A stretch of 64,000 bases of DNA, taken from the IMG/VR virus record IMGVR_UViG_3300025012_000026, positions 163,248-227,247 of that record. The stretch is one strand, 5' to 3'. Every line of letters begins with the position of its first letter. Positions within the stretch are counted from its first letter, which is position 1. A program made the position numbers and the translations under genes. Positions 23,070 to 28,756 of the stretch are shown one piece after another. A model generated the notes under the pieces. That model was not told the DNA's origin. It ran no database searches and saw only the letters and a program-made list of their open reading frames with translations.

Positions 23070-24779
23070 TTATTTCAAAACTCTCGCTCTAATTTCTGCT
23101 AAACTTTCATCTCTTACTAATTTTCCATCAATAAATACATCTTCAAGTAAATCAATAATATCAATTGCATCTTTTTCCATTTCATTTAATCCATCAACCA
23201 AATAGATACCATTTTCACCATCAACTACTGCAACCATTCCTTTTTGAGATTTTTTGATTCCACCAATATCGGTTTTAGGATCTTTAAAGATAAACTTTTC
23301 AACTCCATCAATAACCGTATAAGTGGCCTTTAAAGCGAACGAAAATGTGTCTCTGGTGTGATAACCTAAAGAATAACTTCCAACTCCGTATACGATGTTT
23401 TCTGCTGAAAACCCCTTTGCTTCTAATTGTTTGAAAGTTTCTTCTGCAATTTCTGGACTTATGCTATCTCCATATATTAAGCCCACATGACTATCTAGTA
23501 CCTTATACCCTTTACTATTAATAGTTCCTCCAAAGGTATCCCATAATGCTTCTACAGAACCCTTTTGCTCTATAGTTAATTTTACTTCTTTACAAATATG
23601 AACATTAGCACCATCAATATAATAATATTGTTTATCATGTCTATTCCAATCAATTTCAATAACAATTTCATAATGCTTATCTTGAAATTTAAAAATTGCA
23701 TCTTGCCTAGAAATACCATGTTCTCCATGAGGTGTATCATTTCTTATATCGTCAATTATTCTCTCCAACATAATTTCCTTGCAATCTTCCAGATTATCAC
23801 AATATTCTTCATTGGTTAAATCTTCAACAATCACATTACCGCAAATAATCTTTATTGGACTTCCAGAATCAGGACGAATGACACACTTACCATTTCTACT
23901 CATAATATCATCTTTCAATGAAGGTAAAATATTCCCCAAGACATTAAAATAATCATACCCATCACTAACTATACTTACAATTCCACTAGGGGCAACTTCA
24001 GTAATCATTCTCTTAAAATATCTCAAATCATCTTGATATCCACATTGAATACTATGTTCCGTTGCTAACACACTTGCTGAAACTAATTCCTTTTCCACAT
24101 TAACACCATAATATTGCTCTAAATATTGAATACTTGGAATCGTATCACTACCAGTAAAATATAATAAATGTCCTGCTCCTGTAGTTACTGCATCTTCATG
24201 ACCACTCATACCTCTATAACTAAAATTATGACATTGCCATTGAATATGATCTTTACTATCACATGTTTTCTCAGCCCACTTTTCACAAATGTCTCTATAT
24301 TTCTTTACAATTGTTGTTGCAGTAATTACTTTCCACATATTTGCGGAAATCAATGTCTCTAAGAAATTAGTCAACCAATAGAACTCTTTTTTAGTATTTT
24401 CAATTGTAAACACAGGAACTTTCATTGGAATCAATGTGCCTTCTTTTACTGCCTTGATTTTAATAGGAAGGTATCCTAAATCATGTAATGCTTCAATATG
24501 AGTTGTATCTGCACAATTATCTCCTAGAGAATTTTTAATGATTCTTTTATAATCTGCAACTACTATTGATTTATCAACATTGAAAAAGTTTTCATTGAAA
24601 TTATCAATTAGATAATCTTTAATAAATCCTTGTAAACCAAAGAATACTACTTCATTAATTCCTTCAATTCTTGAATGTCTAGGCGTAAATGTAGAATAAA
24701 TTTTTTCTGTACCTTTTTCACTCATAATGAGGTGGCTTATTTTGTACGAATCTGTCATTAACATTGGATTTGTTTTCAT
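23070..24779 (-). CDS. Nicotinamide phosphoribosyltransferase-like (Namat-like in NARP1 context)
   Basis: TDSYKISH, FFGLQ, HNFSYRG, ATEHS, SIVSDGYD, VIRPDSG, GLIYGDSI, KDPKTD..KKSQKG. Confidence 0.92.
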   Translation of the reverse strand: MKTNPMLMTDSYKISHLIMSEKGTEKIYSTFTPRHSRIEGINEVVFFGLQGFIKDYLIDNFNENFFNVDKSIVVADYKRIIKNSLGDNCADTTHIEALHDLGYLPIKIKAVKEGTLIPMKVPVFTIENTKKEFYWLTNFLETLISANMWKVITATTIVKKYRDICEKWAEKTCDSKDHIQWQCHNFSYRGMSGHEDAVTTGAGHLLYFTGSDTIPSIQYLEQYYGVNVEKELVSASVLATEHSIQCGYQDDLRYFKRMITEVAPSGIVSIVSDGYDYFNVLGNILPSLKDDIMSRNGKCVIRPDSGSPIKIICGNVIVEDLTNEEYCDNLEDCKEIMLERIIDDIRNDTPHGEHGISRQDAIFKFQDKHYEIVIEIDWNRHDKQYYYIDGANVHICKEVKLTIEQKGSVEALWDTFGGTINSKGYKVLDSHVGLIYGDSISPEIAEETFKQLEAKGFSAENIVYGVGSYSLGYHTRDTFSFALKATYTVIDGVEKFIFKDPKTDIGGIKKSQKGMVAVVDGENGIYLVDGLNEMEKDAIDIIDLLEDVFIDGKLVRDESLAEIRARVLK

Positions 24780-24780
24780 A

Positions 24781-25281
24781 TTATTTTACCTCTTTCTTAT
24801 TCATATTATTTAAATACTCAGCAACTTCTTCTAACGATTTAAAATACATTCCACCATTTCTTTCTACTATTAATCCGACCTGATTTAAAGATTTCATTTC
24901 TCCAATTGAAAAATTAATCTTATCATTTGGATAATTAATTTTATCTATAAACATATTAATATCAGGACTTCCAAGATAGCACATTGGATTTGGTACTTGT
25001 GTAATTATTGGAACTTCAGAATTTAATATACAAAATATAGTTTTTCCAGGACGTTTGTTGCTATCATCTATAACTTCTGCAATACTATAGACTCCACTCA
25101 TAGACGGAGTAATTACATATAAACAATAATCACATGTTTCACGTTGTCTACGCTCTTCTATCATACATTCTTCAGTCCAATCCTCTACAACTGGATTAAA
25201 ATAGTTAATATTAAGCATTGGAATTAATTTGTCTCTCCATATACTATTATTACAAGTACCGCCAAGGAATACTTTACTCAT
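24781..25281 (-). CDS. Nucleoside 2-deoxyribosyltransferase-like protein
   Basis: VFLGGTCNNSIWR..YFNPVVEDW..GVYSIAE. Confidence 0.75.
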   Translation of the reverse strand: MSKVFLGGTCNNSIWRDKLIPMLNINYFNPVVEDWTEECMIEERRQRETCDYCLYVITPSMSGVYSIAEVIDDSNKRPGKTIFCILNSEVPIITQVPNPMCYLGSPDINMFIDKINYPNDKINFSIGEMKSLNQVGLIVERNGGMYFKSLEEVAEYLNNMNKKEVK

Positions 25282-25284
25282 GAC

Positions 25285-26109
25285 TTAATTACCTTCTTTC
25301 ATAATTTTATATACTTCAATTTTATCATTTAATGATTCATTCATAATAGTATCTGTAGTGAAAACTTTATCAATCAAGTCTGTTTTAAATACATCGCCTT
25401 TGTAAATTGATTCCTCGCAATGTCCAACAACAAGATAAATTTCAGAAGCTCCAAGTTCTTTAAGTTGTTTTGCACCAAGCAAAAATGTTCCTCCATAACT
25501 TGATAAGTCATCCAACATTATTACTTTAAATCCTTTTTTCTTAACATCTCCAAAAACTTGAAGACTAGTAATTTTACCTGTTTGAAAATCTCTATGTTTA
25601 AATCCAACTAATTGATTTGGAACGCCAATCATTTTACTATAACGTTTCTCACTCGAAGCATCTGGGAAATAAACATAATCAGTATCATCATTGAAATTAA
25701 TTTTGTCTTTAATATCATAAAAAATATCTACAGATAGGAATCTACTTTTACAATTATTTAATAATGCAGGAGTTACATCAGAATGTGGTTCCAATACATG
25801 AATATAATCAAACCCTAAATTATTAATAAATTCTGCAATATATTTTAGTGTAAATGCTGAACCTCCTTCCGATCTATCCATTCTACTGTATGGCATGTAC
25901 ATGATATGTAGATTACAATTTATTTTTAATTGGTCTAGATATTTCTTTAAGAACAATAGTTTAATCAAGTCTGCATCTGATTGATACTTAAATGTAGTTA
26001 ACGAATTATTAACACCTCCTAAAATCTCATTAATTTGTTGTTCATTGAGTTTTGTTTCCCCATTTGGGAATGTAGTAAAATCTAATAGTTTGTTATTTAA
26101 CCAAATCAT
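25285..26109 (-). CDS. Ribose-phosphate pyrophosphokinase-like (Adps-like)
   Basis: FPNGE, YMPYSRMDR, EPHS, FPDASSEKRY, KHRDFQTG, LDDLSSYGGTF; start MIWLNNK after RBS. Confidence 0.9.
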   Translation of the reverse strand: MIWLNNKLLDFTTFPNGETKLNEQQINEILGGVNNSLTTFKYQSDADLIKLLFLKKYLDQLKINCNLHIMYMPYSRMDRSEGGSAFTLKYIAEFINNLGFDYIHVLEPHSDVTPALLNNCKSRFLSVDIFYDIKDKINFNDDTDYVYFPDASSEKRYSKMIGVPNQLVGFKHRDFQTGKITSLQVFGDVKKKGFKVIMLDDLSSYGGTFLLGAKQLKELGASEIYLVVGHCEESIYKGDVFKTDLIDKVFTTDTIMNESLNDKIEVYKIMKEGN

Positions 26110-26205
26110 TTTGTTTCCTCCTGAAATATTTATTTCTATATTCATACTACCACAATTTAGCATAATAAGTCAAGTTTAATTTAAACATCCTTTAAAATTT
26201 GATTT

Positions 26206-26538
26206 TCAATCTAATTCTTCAAAACTAATTTTAATCCTCATTTTCTTTTGAATTTTATGTCTATATATTTCTTCATTGTCAAGATACATTTCTGAAAAAA
26301 TACTATTGGGATAAACCATTAATTTGCCTCCAATAAATTTCCCATCTTTATGCGAATATTTTCCACCAATATAATCCATAATCTCATCTGGTACTTCATT
26401 CGTTGCCTTCATAAAATTCTCTTCATCTACTTCCCAACAAAAACATTCTCCATCTCCTGTGGGCTTACCTATAAATTCAACTGATTTCTTCATACTAACC
26501 TCTCCTTTACACCAATAATAACTTATAAACCATAGCAT
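26206..26538 (-). CDS. Hypothetical protein (likely start MKKSVEF)
   Basis: ORF with RBS AAAGGAGAGG. Confidence 0.55.
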   Translation of the reverse strand: MLWFISYYWCKGEVSMKKSVEFIGKPTGDGECFCWEVDEENFMKATNEVPDEIMDYIGGKYSHKDGKFIGGKLMVYPNSIFSEMYLDNEEIYRHKIQKKMRIKISFEELD

Positions 26539-26596
26539 AAATCATCACCATTACAAACATAATCAACTGTCCCTTAATTTTTTAAAGATTTATAAA

Positions 26597-26684
26597 TACT
26601 TAACTCAAAATACCTAACTTAACACAACTCATCGCAACTTAACTCAAACCAACATATCTAAACCAAACCCAAAATGCTTATCTT
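26597..26684 (-). ncRNA. Second block of the pentamer-module array: one full 60-nt unit (26611-26670) plus two partial units
   Basis: Plus strand aaaa|tacct aactt aacac aactc atcgc aactt aactc aaacc aacat atcta aacca aaccc|aaaa; same grammar as 27189-27564. Confidence 0.75.
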
Positions 26685-26686
26685 AA

Positions 26687-27151
26687 TCAAAAACTATTAC
26701 TTAATACCAATTTACTCTTCTTTTTATTTAACAATTTTAATTCTGTACATCCTCCAGCAAGCATAGCATGAAGTGTTTTTGCTCTATCAGAAACATGCCT
26801 AAATGCCTCCAATCCCTCTTTTGACATTTCATTAACAGGAGCATATTGTAATACTTGATACCCTTTATCAATCTTATTAAAACCACTCTTAATATGTTTT
26901 AAAGACATATCAGTATATTCATCTGGATTAACAATTGAATATCCTTGACCTGCTAAGGATTTAATAGTTTTACTTGATTCAAGTAATTTCTTTTTTGTTT
27001 TACCAATAATAGAATAATATTTAGGTGTATTTTGACTTTCTTTAATAACCTCTTCAATTTCACTATGTAATATCGTAGTGTCATAATCCATTTTTACAAT
27101 ATACTCAAATAGTAATTCCCATTTTTCTTTTTTATTTACTAATTCATTCAT
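26687..27151 (-). CDS. Accessory protein embedded in the array locus (possible winged helix plus helical region)
   Basis: Flanked on both sides by array units; TIKSLAGQGYSIV resembles a wHTH wing. Confidence 0.65.
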   Translation of the reverse strand: MNELVNKKEKWELLFEYIVKMDYDTTILHSEIEEVIKESQNTPKYYSIIGKTKKKLLESSKTIKSLAGQGYSIVNPDEYTDMSLKHIKSGFNKIDKGYQVLQYAPVNEMSKEGLEAFRHVSDRAKTLHAMLAGGCTELKLLNKKKSKLVLSNSF

Positions 27152-27188
27152 TCTTATATCTCCTTTATTATTCTTATTTTGCCCATAA

Positions 27189-27564
27189 TGCCTATCAAAT
27201 CACAGCGTATCGTACCTCAACGAAACCCATCTCAACACAACTGATCCTAAAATGCCTAACAAAACCAAACTCATCACATTCAAGACGCAACTGAACATAT
27301 CTAATCATATCCCAACTTAAAATACATAACAGAACTTATCCCATCCAATCATAACGCAACAGAGCGAAACTGAACCTAAAATACTCATCAAAGCATATCC
27401 AAACCCACCCAAACCCTACTCAACGAAACTGAACATATATTGCTCAACTTAACTCGGCCAAACTTATCATAACGCATTTTATCTCGACGTAACGTAGCAT
27501 ATATTGCTTAACTTATCGTAGCTTGCCCTATCCCATCTTAACTCGCCCCAACCCAACAGAACCT
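27189..27564 (-). ncRNA. Putative guide-RNA array: six 55-66 nt units of (NN + GTT/GAT/GCT) pentamers separated by TTTT/ATAT linkers (VIPR-like)
   Basis: Strict 5-nt periodicity; no ORF >=60 aa; begins 12 nt after the stop of the Cas7-like gene; each unit ends GCA/GTA. Confidence 0.8.
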
Positions 27565-27576
27565 AAAAATCATATC

Positions 27577-28155
27577 TTACTCTACTTCTTCGACTACAGC
27601 TACAAACTGTCCATACTTAGGTCTACTATCACACAGTCCTACATATTTCCCTGCAAAATCAATGCTTTGAATTACAGCTTCTAGATCAATTTGAGACTCT
27701 TCATAATTTACAAAGAATGTAACTTGCCATGTGTCAAATCTTGCTCTAGTTCTTAAAATTGAAGCATTATTTACTTTCATAACTCTAACATCTCTATACT
27801 TTAAATCTGCTTTCAATTGTTCTTTGGTAAGATTTTCACCATATGCAAAAGGTATGTATAACGGTTCAACTGATAAGAATTTCTGAATAGCTGTGCCTTT
27901 CTTAATAGACTTAGCTCCATTTCTAATTGTGGCCTCTACATTTTCTGCTGGCATAAAAGTTCCCATATTATCCTTCCAATACAGACCACATTCCCATTCT
28001 AAGTCTGCAATCATTTCATGATCTTCGTCAGTTTTTGTTCTCTTACCCGTATATTTCTTTAGTTCCTTAGTTAGAGGATGAAGTGGGTTAACTCCTTGGT
28101 TTGAGTGCATAATTAATGGGGTAATACCTTTCCATGTAACTTTAAGTTTTTTCAT
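27577..28155 (-). CDS. Stand-alone Cas7/RAMP-like protein (Vipr-like)
   Basis: RAMP-like motifs: LKVTWKGITPLIMH, FMPAENVEATIR, RTRARFDTWQVTF, C-terminal Gly-rich loop AGKYVGLCDSRPKYGQF. Confidence 0.75.
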   Translation of the reverse strand: MKKLKVTWKGITPLIMHSNQGVNPLHPLTKELKKYTGKRTKTDEDHEMIADLEWECGLYWKDNMGTFMPAENVEATIRNGAKSIKKGTAIQKFLSVEPLYIPFAYGENLTKEQLKADLKYRDVRVMKVNNASILRTRARFDTWQVTFFVNYEESQIDLEAVIQSIDFAGKYVGLCDSRPKYGQFVAVVEEVE

Positions 28156-28201
28156 TTTTAAACTCCCTCTTTCTTTTTAATTATTTATTTCTTACAAGTA
28201 A

Positions 28202-28230
28202 ATAATAACATGTTTATAGTAATTTGTCAA
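28202..28230 (-). promoter_or_regulatory. sigmaA promoter for the RAMP gene and array
   Basis: TTGACA-17-TATTAT with extended TG. Confidence 0.75.
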
Positions 28231-28441
28231 TAATTATTTATTGATTTAAGCTCGATAAAATATTTTTTTTAACTTATAAGACTTCTTCCTGCTTTATACA
28301 TTATGAATCCACCTATTGATACAACAATTGCGAATACAAAAACATTTATATTTGAATAACATATAAAATATGATCCACCAAAAGACAAAACAAAACCTAT
28401 AATTATAAATAATAATAATTTAAAAAATATCTCCCACAAAC

Positions 28442-28756
28442 CTAACTCTCCCTCTCTTTAGGATTCTCCCAATCCAAAAATTCCTTCTCTGCTCTTTCTC
28501 TACAATCAGGACAAAACCCTCTACCCATTCCATCAGTACATAAATGAGCATTACCATCTTTACCACAATACCAACATAGATAAAAACTATTTTGTTTAGA
28601 GGGATGCCAAGGACTCTCTATGCTTCCTTCTTCAATGAAAAGATGTCCACATTCATTTTCAAATTCCTCATCAGTCATATTTTCAAAATGATCTGCAACT
28701 AATTTTAATTTATCTTCCATTGTTAATTGCAATGATTCTTCATCTGTCAATTCCAT
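28442..28756 (-). CDS. Hypothetical protein with C-terminal Zn finger
   Basis: CWYCG..FCPDC. Confidence 0.55.
   Translation of the reverse strand: MELTDEESLQLTMEDKLKLVADHFENMTDEEFENECGHLFIEEGSIESPWHPSKQNSFYLCWYCGKDGNAHLCTDGMGRGFCPDCRERAEKEFLDWENPKERES

What the first reader, a model, noticed from the sequence alone, without database searches (positions are those of the whole stretch)
26597..28230. Stand-alone Cas7/RAMP-like gene plus pentamer-coded ncRNA array: candidate non-CRISPR RNA-guided system (VIPR-like)
Seen: a sigmaA promoter (28202-28230) precedes a 192-aa protein with RAMP/Cas7-like motifs (TPLIMH, MPAENVEATIR, terminal Gly-rich loop). Twelve nt after its stop begins a non-coding array of six units (27505-27564, 27441-27500, 27382-27436, 27323-27377, 27253-27318, 27189-27248), then a 154-aa gene, then a seventh unit (26611-26670). 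On the transcribed strand each unit is 11-13 pentamers of variable NN plus a conserved triplet (mostly GTT/GAT). By my count 80 of 83 triplets start with G, and every unit ends GCA/GTA followed by an A/T-only linker (TTTT or ATAT between units). No cas1/cas2, other cas genes or repeat-spacer CRISPR are present in the window. Established: Cas7 subunits polymerise on RNA with a fixed period. Inference: each unit is a processed guide on which one subunit binds each pentamer, and the NN pairs form a gapped targeting code, probably against competing phages or MGEs. From memory this matches the recently reported VIPR systems (GGY/NN motifs); I cannot verify that here.
Basis: partly seen in the sequence, partly recalled or inferred. 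Interest (0 to 1): 0.96.

Follow-up and report, generated by a model that had tools for sequence, protein, structure and literature searches.

The report
Phage VIPR RNA-guided gene-silencing locus
A large AT-rich phage carries a small Cas7-like protein gene next to seven short guide RNAs written in a five-base code. It is a new member of the VIPR family described in 2026, and four guides match capsid and replication-module genes of rival prophage-like elements.

Summary
The 192-aa protein (27577-28155, -) matches the solved SUSP1 Vipr protein over its full length (E=2.4e-25). Its predicted fold (pLDDT 91) hits Csm3/Cas7 subunits. Seven units of 11-13 pentamers (NN + G-W-T) lie on the same strand. 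They are the strongest period-5 signal in the window. The 154-aa gene between units 6 and 7 is a vap1 homologue (profile-profile probability 96.9%).

Under the published one-base-skip rule, four guides have coherent natural targets. Units 2, 3 and 4 hit one family of ~900-1080-aa proteins, which sits in a prophage replication module in the one context examined. Unit 6 hits an SU10-type major capsid gene of elements of 20 kb or less. Read bases fall on codon positions 1-2 and skipped bases on the variable wobble position.

Three features differ from SUSP1:
- The repeat triplet is G-W-T, not GGY, and the residue that stacks on the second G is Ser instead of Trp.
- There is no ~40-nt 3' tail. Units end R-R-G-Y-A plus a 4-nt A/T linker, and the last NN is unread in 24 of 26 target copies.
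- The main array lies between vipr and vap.

Verdict: a new member of a known, very recent family. Expression, processing and host are untested.

The parts
28202..28230 (-). Sigma-70-type promoter-like site (TTGACA, 17 nt, TATTAT, with extended TG) upstream of vipr
   Evidence: 11 of 12 matches, the best in 26100-28500. This is a consensus match only.
27577..28155 (-). vipr: 192-aa RAMP/Cas7-like Vipr protein
   Evidence: PDB 36pp 'SUSP1 Vipr protein', E=2.4e-25, residues 1-186 against 1-187; phrog_4652, E=1.8e-49. AF2 pLDDT 91.1; Foldseek top hits are Csm3, type VII Cas7 and Cmr4. H17, K33, E71, R137, D176 and R178 are conserved, and SUSP1 W178 is Ser177 here.
27505..27564 (-). vrRNA unit 1 (12 pentamers)
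   Evidence: Possible target: 21 of 22 read bases over the RBS and start codon of a gene in L024/L025. Doubtful.
27441..27500 (-). vrRNA unit 2 (12 pentamers)
   Evidence: 10 IMG/VR hits, 22 of 22 read bases, all in frame on peptide ITTENAMKWEK of phrog_8308-family proteins.
27382..27436 (-). vrRNA unit 3 (11 pentamers)
   Evidence: 2 hits, 18-19 of 20 read bases, on peptide HSDGCGWIL of phrog_8308-family proteins.
27323..27377 (-). vrRNA unit 4 (11 pentamers)
   Evidence: three homologous hits (L048, L072, L077). The guide is antisense to the gene (peptide CRFPHIAREW) in distant phrog_8308 relatives. The other 9 hits are unrelated, as chance hits would be.
27253..27318 (-). vrRNA unit 5 (13 pentamers, with one extra base after pentamer 8)
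   Evidence: No target found: 16 hits to its first 8 dinucleotides, and none extends.
27189..27248 (-). vrRNA unit 6 (12 pentamers)
   Evidence: 9 IMG/VR hits, 20-22 of 22 read bases, on peptide SQVEGSETTVF of SU10_MCP-family major capsid genes.
27180..27184 (-). Extra handle copy (GGGCA) that closes the main array after a TTAT linker
   Evidence: Equivalent short end pieces close the arrays in L004, L021 and L023.
26687..27151 (-). vap1-like accessory gene (154 aa, predicted winged-helix DNA binder)
   Evidence: 44-68% identical to the gene next to vipr in L018 and L021-L023; hhalign against the SUSP1/Medea1/MakoManhole/LittleE vap group gives probability 96.9%, E=2e-10; model pLDDT 87.9, with weak winged-helix matches (E >= 0.04).
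26675..26679 (-). Handle copy (AAGCA, followed by TTTT) just before unit 7
26611..26670 (-). vrRNA unit 7 (12 pentamers, one degenerate), downstream of vap
   Evidence: Nearly the same unit is present in L001. No exact core match in IMG/VR or the metagenome collection.
26597..26606 (-). Two-pentamer end piece (GAGTT AAGTA) after a TTTT linker

Best explanation
This is a phage-borne VIPR system of the SUSP1 (type II) lineage: vipr, a vap1-like gene and seven vrRNAs.

Proposed mechanism, with shown and inferred steps marked:
1. One promoter drives vipr, six guide units, vap and a seventh unit as a single precursor (inferred).
2. Vipr protomers polymerise on each pentamer tract, one per pentamer (inferred from the SUSP1 cryo-EM structures).
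3. The conserved G is read by His17 and Asp176, and the conserved T by the Glu71/Arg178 pocket. These residues are conserved here (shown).
4. The second triplet base is free to be T or A because the Trp that stacks on G2 in SUSP1 is Ser here (correlation shown, causation inferred).
5. Each unit ends R-R-G-Y-A followed by a U/A linker. The purine at triplet position 3 cannot enter the pyrimidine pocket, so the filament stops there. Host RNases then trim the exposed linker, giving tail-less guides of about 55-65 nt (inferred).
6. The filament reads double-stranded DNA with the NN pairs and skips one base between them, so it reads codon positions 1-2 and ignores the wobble base (shown computationally for four guides).
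7. Binding blocks transcription of a replication-module gene family of ~35-45 kb prophages and of the major capsid gene of small integrative elements, and so disarms competitors or parasites in the same host (inferred by analogy with SUSP1).
For: Protein:
- Full-length match to the solved SUSP1 Vipr, E=2.4e-25.
- The RAMP fold is confirmed on a pLDDT-91 model.
- RNA- and DNA-contact residues named in 10.64898/2026.04.26.720927 are conserved, except W178, which is Ser. That Ser is invariant in 120 clade proteins.

RNA:
- The period-5 arrays are unique in the window.
- They are present beside every clade homologue examined.
- They show no structure beyond chance (z=+0.5) and match no Rfam family.
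- The guides are hypervariable: L001 has an identical Vipr protein but entirely different main-array guides.

vap: profile-profile probability 96.9% to the SUSP1-type vap group.

Targets:
- A 16-base pattern gave 16 unrelated hits, which calibrates chance at about 0.06 hits for a 20-base pattern.
- Unit 2 gave 10 hits and unit 6 gave 9 hits with 20-base patterns.
- In each case all hits lie at one site of homologous genes and in frame, and no two hit sequences are alike. The skipped bases vary at 7 of 9 positions.
- The bases the guides read are identical across homologues only 34-73% (unit 2) or ~50-85% (unit 6) identical.
- Units 2, 3 and 4 converge on one protein family.
- Units 2, 3 and 6 have the same sense as the mRNA and unit 4 is antisense, so the target is DNA, not RNA.
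- One target contig (L039) comes from the same metagenome sample as a contig that carries the identical vipr gene (L001).
- Target contigs have 26-36% G+C, against 29% for the window.
- No self-target in the window exceeds shuffled controls.
- 24 guides from relatives gave no match of 85% or more on the same target loci.
Against: - There are no expression, processing or binding data for this system.
- Three of seven guides (5, 7 and arguably 1) have no convincing target.
- Only exact matches could be scanned, and only the one-base-skip rule was scanned against the collections.
- The host is unknown, and a shared host for phage and targets is not shown.
- Only 64 kb of a phage of up to ~230-270 kb was checked for self-targets.
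- The phrog_8308 target protein has no known function.
- The link between Ser177 and the relaxed second base rests on two non-aromatic lineages against eight aromatic ones.
- The filament-stop and RNase-trimming steps are pure inference.
- The preprint's figures were not available to me, so its type assignment could not be read.
Confidence: 0.85

Rival explanations
1. The same VIPR machinery destroys its target through a recruited nuclease, as proposed for type III and V VIPR, rather than silencing transcription.
For: The preprint reports nuclease- or helicase-linked VIPR types. Mid-gene target sites would suit cleavage as well as a roadblock.
Against: The only partner gene is a vap1 homologue with a winged-helix-like model and no nuclease domain. 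The adjacent genes are NAD-metabolism and phosphatase genes. The closest characterised relative, SUSP1, is a silencer.
Confidence: 0.07
2. The guides regulate the phage's own genes, as a timing or lysis-lysogeny control, rather than attacking competitors.
For: Only 64 kb of a much larger genome could be checked. Units 5 and 7 have no external target. Unit 7 is conserved between L001 and the window.
Against: No site in the window exceeds shuffled-guide controls; the best is 17 of 22. Four guides match genes that have no homologue in the window. The preprint found no self-targets in other VIPR systems.
Confidence: 0.05
3. The filament targets RNA, acting as an antisense or type III-like system, not DNA.
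For: The best fold matches are type III and type VII Cas7 subunits, which bind RNA targets.
Against: Guides 2, 3 and 6 have the same sense as the target mRNA in all 21 hits, so they cannot pair with it. Only guide 4 is antisense. SUSP1 Vipr binds double-stranded DNA.
Confidence: 0.02
4. The array is a degenerate simple repeat with no RNA function, and its position next to the Vipr gene is incidental.
For: There are no expression data. Tandem Repeats Finder does not call it.
Against: The same architecture sits beside every clade homologue. Triplets are conserved while NN pairs are hypervariable. The end motifs are conserved. The in-frame matches to foreign genes are far above the calibrated chance rate.
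Confidence: 0.01

Closest known systems
SUSP1 / P. fulva type II VIPR (bioRxiv 10.64898/2026.04.26.720920; structures in 10.64898/2026.04.26.720927)
   Same: - The Vipr protein is homologous (about 31% identity, E=2.4e-25).
- The contact residues for G1, Y3 and the target backbone are conserved.
- The partner gene is a vap1 homologue.
- Guides are pentamer repeats of 11-13 units.
- Targeting follows the one-base-skip rule in codon phase and hits both DNA strands.
- The system is phage-borne and its targets are other mobile elements.
- No self-target was found.
   Different: - The triplet is G-W-T instead of GGY, and Ser replaces the G2-stacking Trp.
- There is no ~40-nt pseudoknot tail. Units are joined by 4-nt A/T linkers after an R-R-G-Y-A end pentamer.
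- The main array lies between vipr and vap, not after vap.
- The units are 55-66 nt, against about 100 nt in SUSP1.
- The background is an AT-rich (29% G+C) phage.
Noncanonical-repeat VIPR arrays (bioRxiv 10.64898/2026.10.21.760802)
   Same: These are period-5 arrays with a fixed trinucleotide other than GGY, next to Vipr-fold proteins. That preprint reports 21 of 99 clusters of this kind.
   Different: The text names GAC, CAC, WGT and TGH triplets. G-W-T is not among those named, and I could not see Fig. S10. No targets or residue correlations are given there.
SUSP1 against the F5 satellite (bioRxiv 10.64898/2026.10.15.759431)
   Same: Guides read near-invariant codon positions of a gene shared by many competing elements and skip the wobble base, which blocks escape by synonymous change.
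   Different: There the target is a satellite excision recombinase. Here the targets are a replication-module gene family and a major capsid gene. Whether the capsid-bearing elements are satellites is not shown.
Cas7 backbone of class 1 CRISPR effectors (Csm3, Cmr4, type VII Cas7)
   Same: The RRM/RAMP fold with a thumb and a glycine-rich loop, and periodic binding along a guide RNA.
   Different: There are no other cas genes and no repeat-spacer array. The period is 5 nt rather than 6 nt. The guide is noncontiguous. The guides are hard-wired, with no adaptation module.

Membership tests
VIPR | Vipr protein: a stand-alone RAMP homologue (RRM core, thumb, G-loop) related to known Vipr proteins | tested here: met
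   SUSP1 Vipr (PDB 36pp), E=2.4e-25, full length; pLDDT-91 model, with Csm3/Cas7 as best folds. G-loop and contact residues align.
VIPR | vrRNA: 9-16 tandem pentamers, each a conserved triplet alternating with hypervariable NN, beside vipr | tested here: met
   seven units of 11-13 pentamers. The triplet is G-W-T rather than GGY, which fits the 'related consensus' the preprint allows; the NN pairs are hypervariable between phages with identical Vipr.
VIPR | Minimal locus: vipr plus a vap gene, with no cas genes and no CRISPR array | tested here: met
   vap1 homology, probability 96.9%; no repeat-spacer array in the window. The flanking genes are unrelated to cas genes. I did not screen all ORFs of the window.
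VIPR | Targets obey the one-base-skip rule, usually in codon phase, in other mobile elements | tested here: met
   four guides, 24 coherent hits, with the skipped base at the wobble position. Other skip lengths were tested only inside the window.
VIPR | vrRNAs are expressed, processed and bound by Vipr, and the complex binds double-stranded DNA and silences transcription | not testable with these tools
   This needs small-RNA sequencing, pull-down and reporter assays.
VIPR type II (SUSP1 clade) vrRNA architecture | An invariable ~40-nt structured 3' tail (a pseudoknot in SUSP1) after the repeat tract | tested here: not met
   the units are separated by only 4-5 A/T bases; no structure beyond chance; no Rfam match, so no ribozyme.
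VIPR type II (SUSP1 clade) vrRNA architecture | GGY triplet, with G2 stacked on a Trp of the G-loop | tested here: not met
   the second triplet base is T 52%, A 27%, G 11%, C 11%. Ser at the Trp position, invariant in the clade.
CRISPR-Cas class 1 | Multi-subunit cas operon, a repeat-spacer array, and contiguous 6-nt-period guide pairing | tested here: not met
   a single RAMP gene and no CRISPR array. The period is 5 and the code is gapped.

The most novel reading that the evidence does not exclude
This clade is a distinct, minimal VIPR subtype.
- Loss of the G2-stacking aromatic residue relaxes the repeat code to G-N-Y.
- The guide's end is set by a purine at triplet position 3 plus a U-rich linker, not by a structured tail.
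- Functional guides are therefore ~55-65-nt unstructured RNAs cut out by host RNases.

If this holds, the residue at the SUSP1 W178 position would predict the repeat motif across the family. About a quarter of the 150 nearest cluster representatives are non-aromatic at that position. The tail would also be dispensable for a programmable DNA binder.
Probability: 0.35. Interest if true: 0.6.

Novelty: new member of a known kind. Interest (0 to 1): 0.5.

Why it matters
VIPR was described only in 2026, and its biology rests on two Gram-negative systems. This locus extends the family in four ways.
- The one-base-skip, codon-phased code also holds in a divergent, AT-rich phage clade with a different repeat triplet and no tail. 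That clade is abundant in human-gut metagenomes.
- Three guides converge on three branches of one gene family, and a fourth hits a capsid gene.
- Each guide reads a peptide motif that stays fixed across homologues only 34-50% identical. This suggests that guides are selected for breadth.
- The locus gives a testable protein-RNA rule: an aromatic residue at the W178 position goes with G at triplet position 2. It also suggests a shorter, tail-less guide design.

Tried and rejected
- Pfam finds nothing credible for Vipr or vap.
- Megablast of the locus against GenBank phages finds no match.
The single-protein scan found only one distant locus, so the host was not identified.
- Self-targeting in the window was tested with skips of 0 to 3 bases. 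Nothing exceeds shuffled controls, apart from the array matching itself at skip 3.
- Unit 7: no exact hit in IMG/VR or the metagenome collection.
- Unit 5: 16 hits, none extending under either spacing. I used these as the chance calibration.
- Unit 4: 9 of 12 hits were judged to be chance, because they lie in unrelated genes, frames and G+C contents.
- Unit 1: the hit lies over an RBS and start codon, out of codon phase, in contigs of 42-44% G+C. I kept it only as 'possible'.
- Guides from relatives do not hit the fetched target loci.
- The target loci carry no vrRNA-like arrays.
- The phrog_8308 target protein has no Pfam or PDB match by sequence.
- Supplementary files and figures of the VIPR preprints are not held. 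I therefore could not read the formal type of this clade, or whether G-W-T arrays are already drawn there.
Full report
**What is there**

On the - strand, a promoter-like site (28230-28202, 11 of 12 consensus matches with an extended TG) precedes a 192-aa ORF (27577-28155). Twelve bases after its stop codon, six units of 55-66 nt begin. They are separated by ATAT or TTTT linkers. A 154-aa ORF follows (26687-27151), and then a seventh unit (26611-26670).

Each unit is a run of 11-13 pentamers. Positions 1-2 are variable. Position 3 is G: 78 of 83 in a strict register, or 81 of 83 once a one-base insertion in unit 5 is allowed for. Position 4 is mostly T or A. Position 5 is T in 82% of pentamers.

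The strongest period-5 G signal of the whole 64 kb, on either strand, lies in this locus. No comparable run occurs in 240 kb of other AT-rich phage DNA. The array RNA has no structure beyond chance (z=+0.5), matches no Rfam family, and has no terminator-like site nearby. The window contains no CRISPR-type repeat array.

**The protein**

Pfam is silent. The protein belongs to phrog_4652 (E=1.8e-49). It matches the solved 'SUSP1 Vipr protein' (PDB 36pp) over its whole length with E=2.4e-25.

An AlphaFold model built on 27 homologues has pLDDT 91.1. Its best structural matches in a PDB copy that ends before the Vipr structures were released are Csm3, type VII Cas7 and Cmr4 backbone subunits (E from 9e-6, TM 0.45-0.57).

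The family is large. It comprises 2,290 clusters at 50% identity with E of 1e-3 or better.

**Comparison with the published mechanism**

The VIPR preprints describe the system as follows.
- Vipr protomers polymerise on YNNGG repeats.
- G1 is read by H17 and D177.
- G2 is held by R138 and stacked on W178.
- Y3 sits in a pocket formed by E71, M72, R179 and G-loop residues, which excludes purines.
- K33 contacts the target backbone.
- The NN pairs read double-stranded DNA and skip one base between them.

In the alignment this protein keeps H17, K33, E71, R137, D176 and R178. It has Ser177 where SUSP1 has W178. That Ser is invariant in 120 clade members.

This fits the RNA. G1 and the pyrimidine are conserved, but the second triplet base is not G.

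Across the loci I could examine, the pattern is as follows.
- Seven lineages with Trp or Tyr at that position have GGY arrays: SUSP1, MakoManhole, LittleE, Trine, prophiBWHA-1, Medea1 and a Rhodocyclaceae MAG. Phage phiHSIC, with Phe, is an eighth aromatic lineage with G at triplet position 2, if its array is read as TGC/NN on the strand opposite vipr.
- The two non-aromatic lineages do not. The Ser clade has G-W-T. An Asn clade at 41% identity has G-A-N.

This sample is small and the link is a hypothesis. Among the 150 nearest cluster representatives, about a quarter are non-aromatic at this position. A separate preprint reports that 21 of 99 VIPR-like array clusters have noncanonical triplets.

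**Relatives**

Homologues at 64-85% identity come from IMG/VR, human-gut and other metagenomes. All carry the same kind of array beside the gene. They share the same unit ends: R-R-G-Y-A, then a 4-5-nt A/T linker, then A or G. A short extra handle copy closes each array.

The position of the array varies. It may lie upstream of vipr, between vipr and vap, or after vap.

One contig (L001) encodes an identical Vipr protein but a completely different set of main-array guides. Its post-vap unit is nearly the same as unit 7. Guides therefore turn over much faster than the protein.

**The second gene**

The 154-aa protein is 44-68% identical to the gene that accompanies vipr in those relatives. As a profile it matches the vap genes of SUSP1, Medea1, MakoManhole and LittleE with 96.9% probability (E=2e-10). 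Its model (pLDDT 87.9) begins with a winged-helix-like unit. Matches to OmpR-type DNA-binding domains are only weak (E 0.04 or worse).

**Targets**

I converted each unit to NN-x-NN-x patterns and scanned IMG/VR for exact matches.

Chance was calibrated empirically. A 16-base pattern (unit 5) gave 16 unrelated hits, and none extended. A 20-base pattern should therefore give about 0.06 chance hits.

- **Unit 6** (20 bases) gave 9 hits. All lie at one site of SU10-type major capsid genes (PF17236, E=4e-75), on the peptide SQVEGSETTVF.
- **Unit 2** gave 10 hits. All lie on ITTENAMKWEK in proteins of 860-1080 aa from phrog_8308. The unsearched first dinucleotide also matched in 10 of 10.
- **Unit 3** gave two hits, on HSDGCGWIL in the same family.
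- **Unit 4** gave three homologous hits among twelve. Here the guide is antisense, on CRFPHIAREW, in distant relatives of that family.

In every coherent hit the read bases are codon positions 1-2 and the skipped base is the wobble position. No two hit sequences for units 2 and 6 are alike, and the skipped base varies at 7 of 9 positions. The proteins hit are as little as 34% (unit 2) or about 50% (unit 6) identical to each other.

Guides 2, 3 and 6 have the sense of the mRNA and guide 4 is antisense. This fits a DNA target and not an RNA target.

The NN of the last pentamer matches the target in none of the 24 coherent hits. It matches only in the doubtful unit-1 site, two near-identical contigs where AA meets AA. 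The terminal R-R-G-Y-A therefore behaves as a handle, and each guide reads 10-12 dinucleotides (30-36 bp).

Unit 1 has one possible site (21 of 22 read bases), over an RBS and start codon in a higher-G+C phage. I regard it as doubtful. Units 5 and 7 have no exact match.

No self-target exists in the window.

**What the targets are**

In L038 the phrog_8308 gene sits between a DnaD-like helicase loader and a Holliday-junction resolvase plus terminase genes, in a ~35-kb prophage-like contig. Its function is unknown.

The capsid gene lies in contigs of 20 kb or less. These carry an integrase and, in L031, a large terminase within about 12 kb. Such elements could be small prophages or capsid-forming satellites. 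That reading is my inference.

Target contigs have 26-36% G+C, like the window at 29%. One of them comes from the same metagenome sample as a contig with the identical vipr gene.

**Verdict**

The locus is a new member of a known family. Three features depart from the SUSP1 archetype:
- a G-W-T triplet with a matching Ser substitution;
- tail-less units with a purine-ended handle;
- an array placed between vipr and vap.

Because the preprints' figures and supplements were not available to me, I cannot say whether these features are already covered by one of the seven published types. Expression, processing, filament termination, the mode of interference and the host all remain untested.

Noticed in passing
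window 23070-26163 (-): Three genes lie just downstream of the VIPR locus: NAMPT-like (PF04095 + PF18127), nucleoside 2-deoxyribosyltransferase-like (PF15891) and PRPP-synthetase-like (PF14572). From memory, this resembles phage NAD+ salvage or reconstitution clusters that counter NAD-depleting defences.
   Followed up: partly
L001 4580-5510 (IMGVR_UViG_3300024999_000035): The Vipr protein is 100% identical to the window's, but all main-array guides differ. The post-vap unit differs at only two dinucleotides. Guides turn over quickly around a fixed protein.
   Followed up: partly
L007 4660-5300 and L009 4660-5490: This Vipr clade is 41% identical, with Gln at H17 and Asn at the W178 position. 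It is followed by long arrays with a G-A-N triplet, a third repeat flavour.
   Followed up: partly
L066 3136-3390 (Listonella phage phiHSIC): A period-5 array reads GCA/NN on the vipr strand, or TGC/NN on the other strand. It lies under the annotated ORF21, so that ORF may be a mis-annotated vrRNA array.
   Followed up: no
window 27253-27318 (-): Unit 5 has one extra base after its 8th pentamer (TTGAA-T). How a filament with a 5-nt period, or the target spacing, copes with this is unknown. No target was found under either spacing.
   Followed up: partly
L018 3799-3908: A human-gut relative has a 110-nt double-length unit with an internal duplication of about four pentamers. It looks like two units fused by loss of a junction.
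   Followed up: no
window 1-64000: G+C is 27-30% throughout, and GC skew is strongly negative over the whole window. There are no tRNA genes. L002 and L005, 8.6-kb loci cut from IMG/VR contigs of 227 kb and 146 kb, are identical to the window over their full length. This points to a very large phage.
   Followed up: partly
L038 6649-9468; L045 2342-5506; L048 4197-7394: phrog_8308 is a family of 900-1080-aa proteins with no Pfam or PDB match by sequence. In L038 it lies in a prophage replication module. Three different guides target it, so it may be a key function worth identifying.
   Followed up: partly
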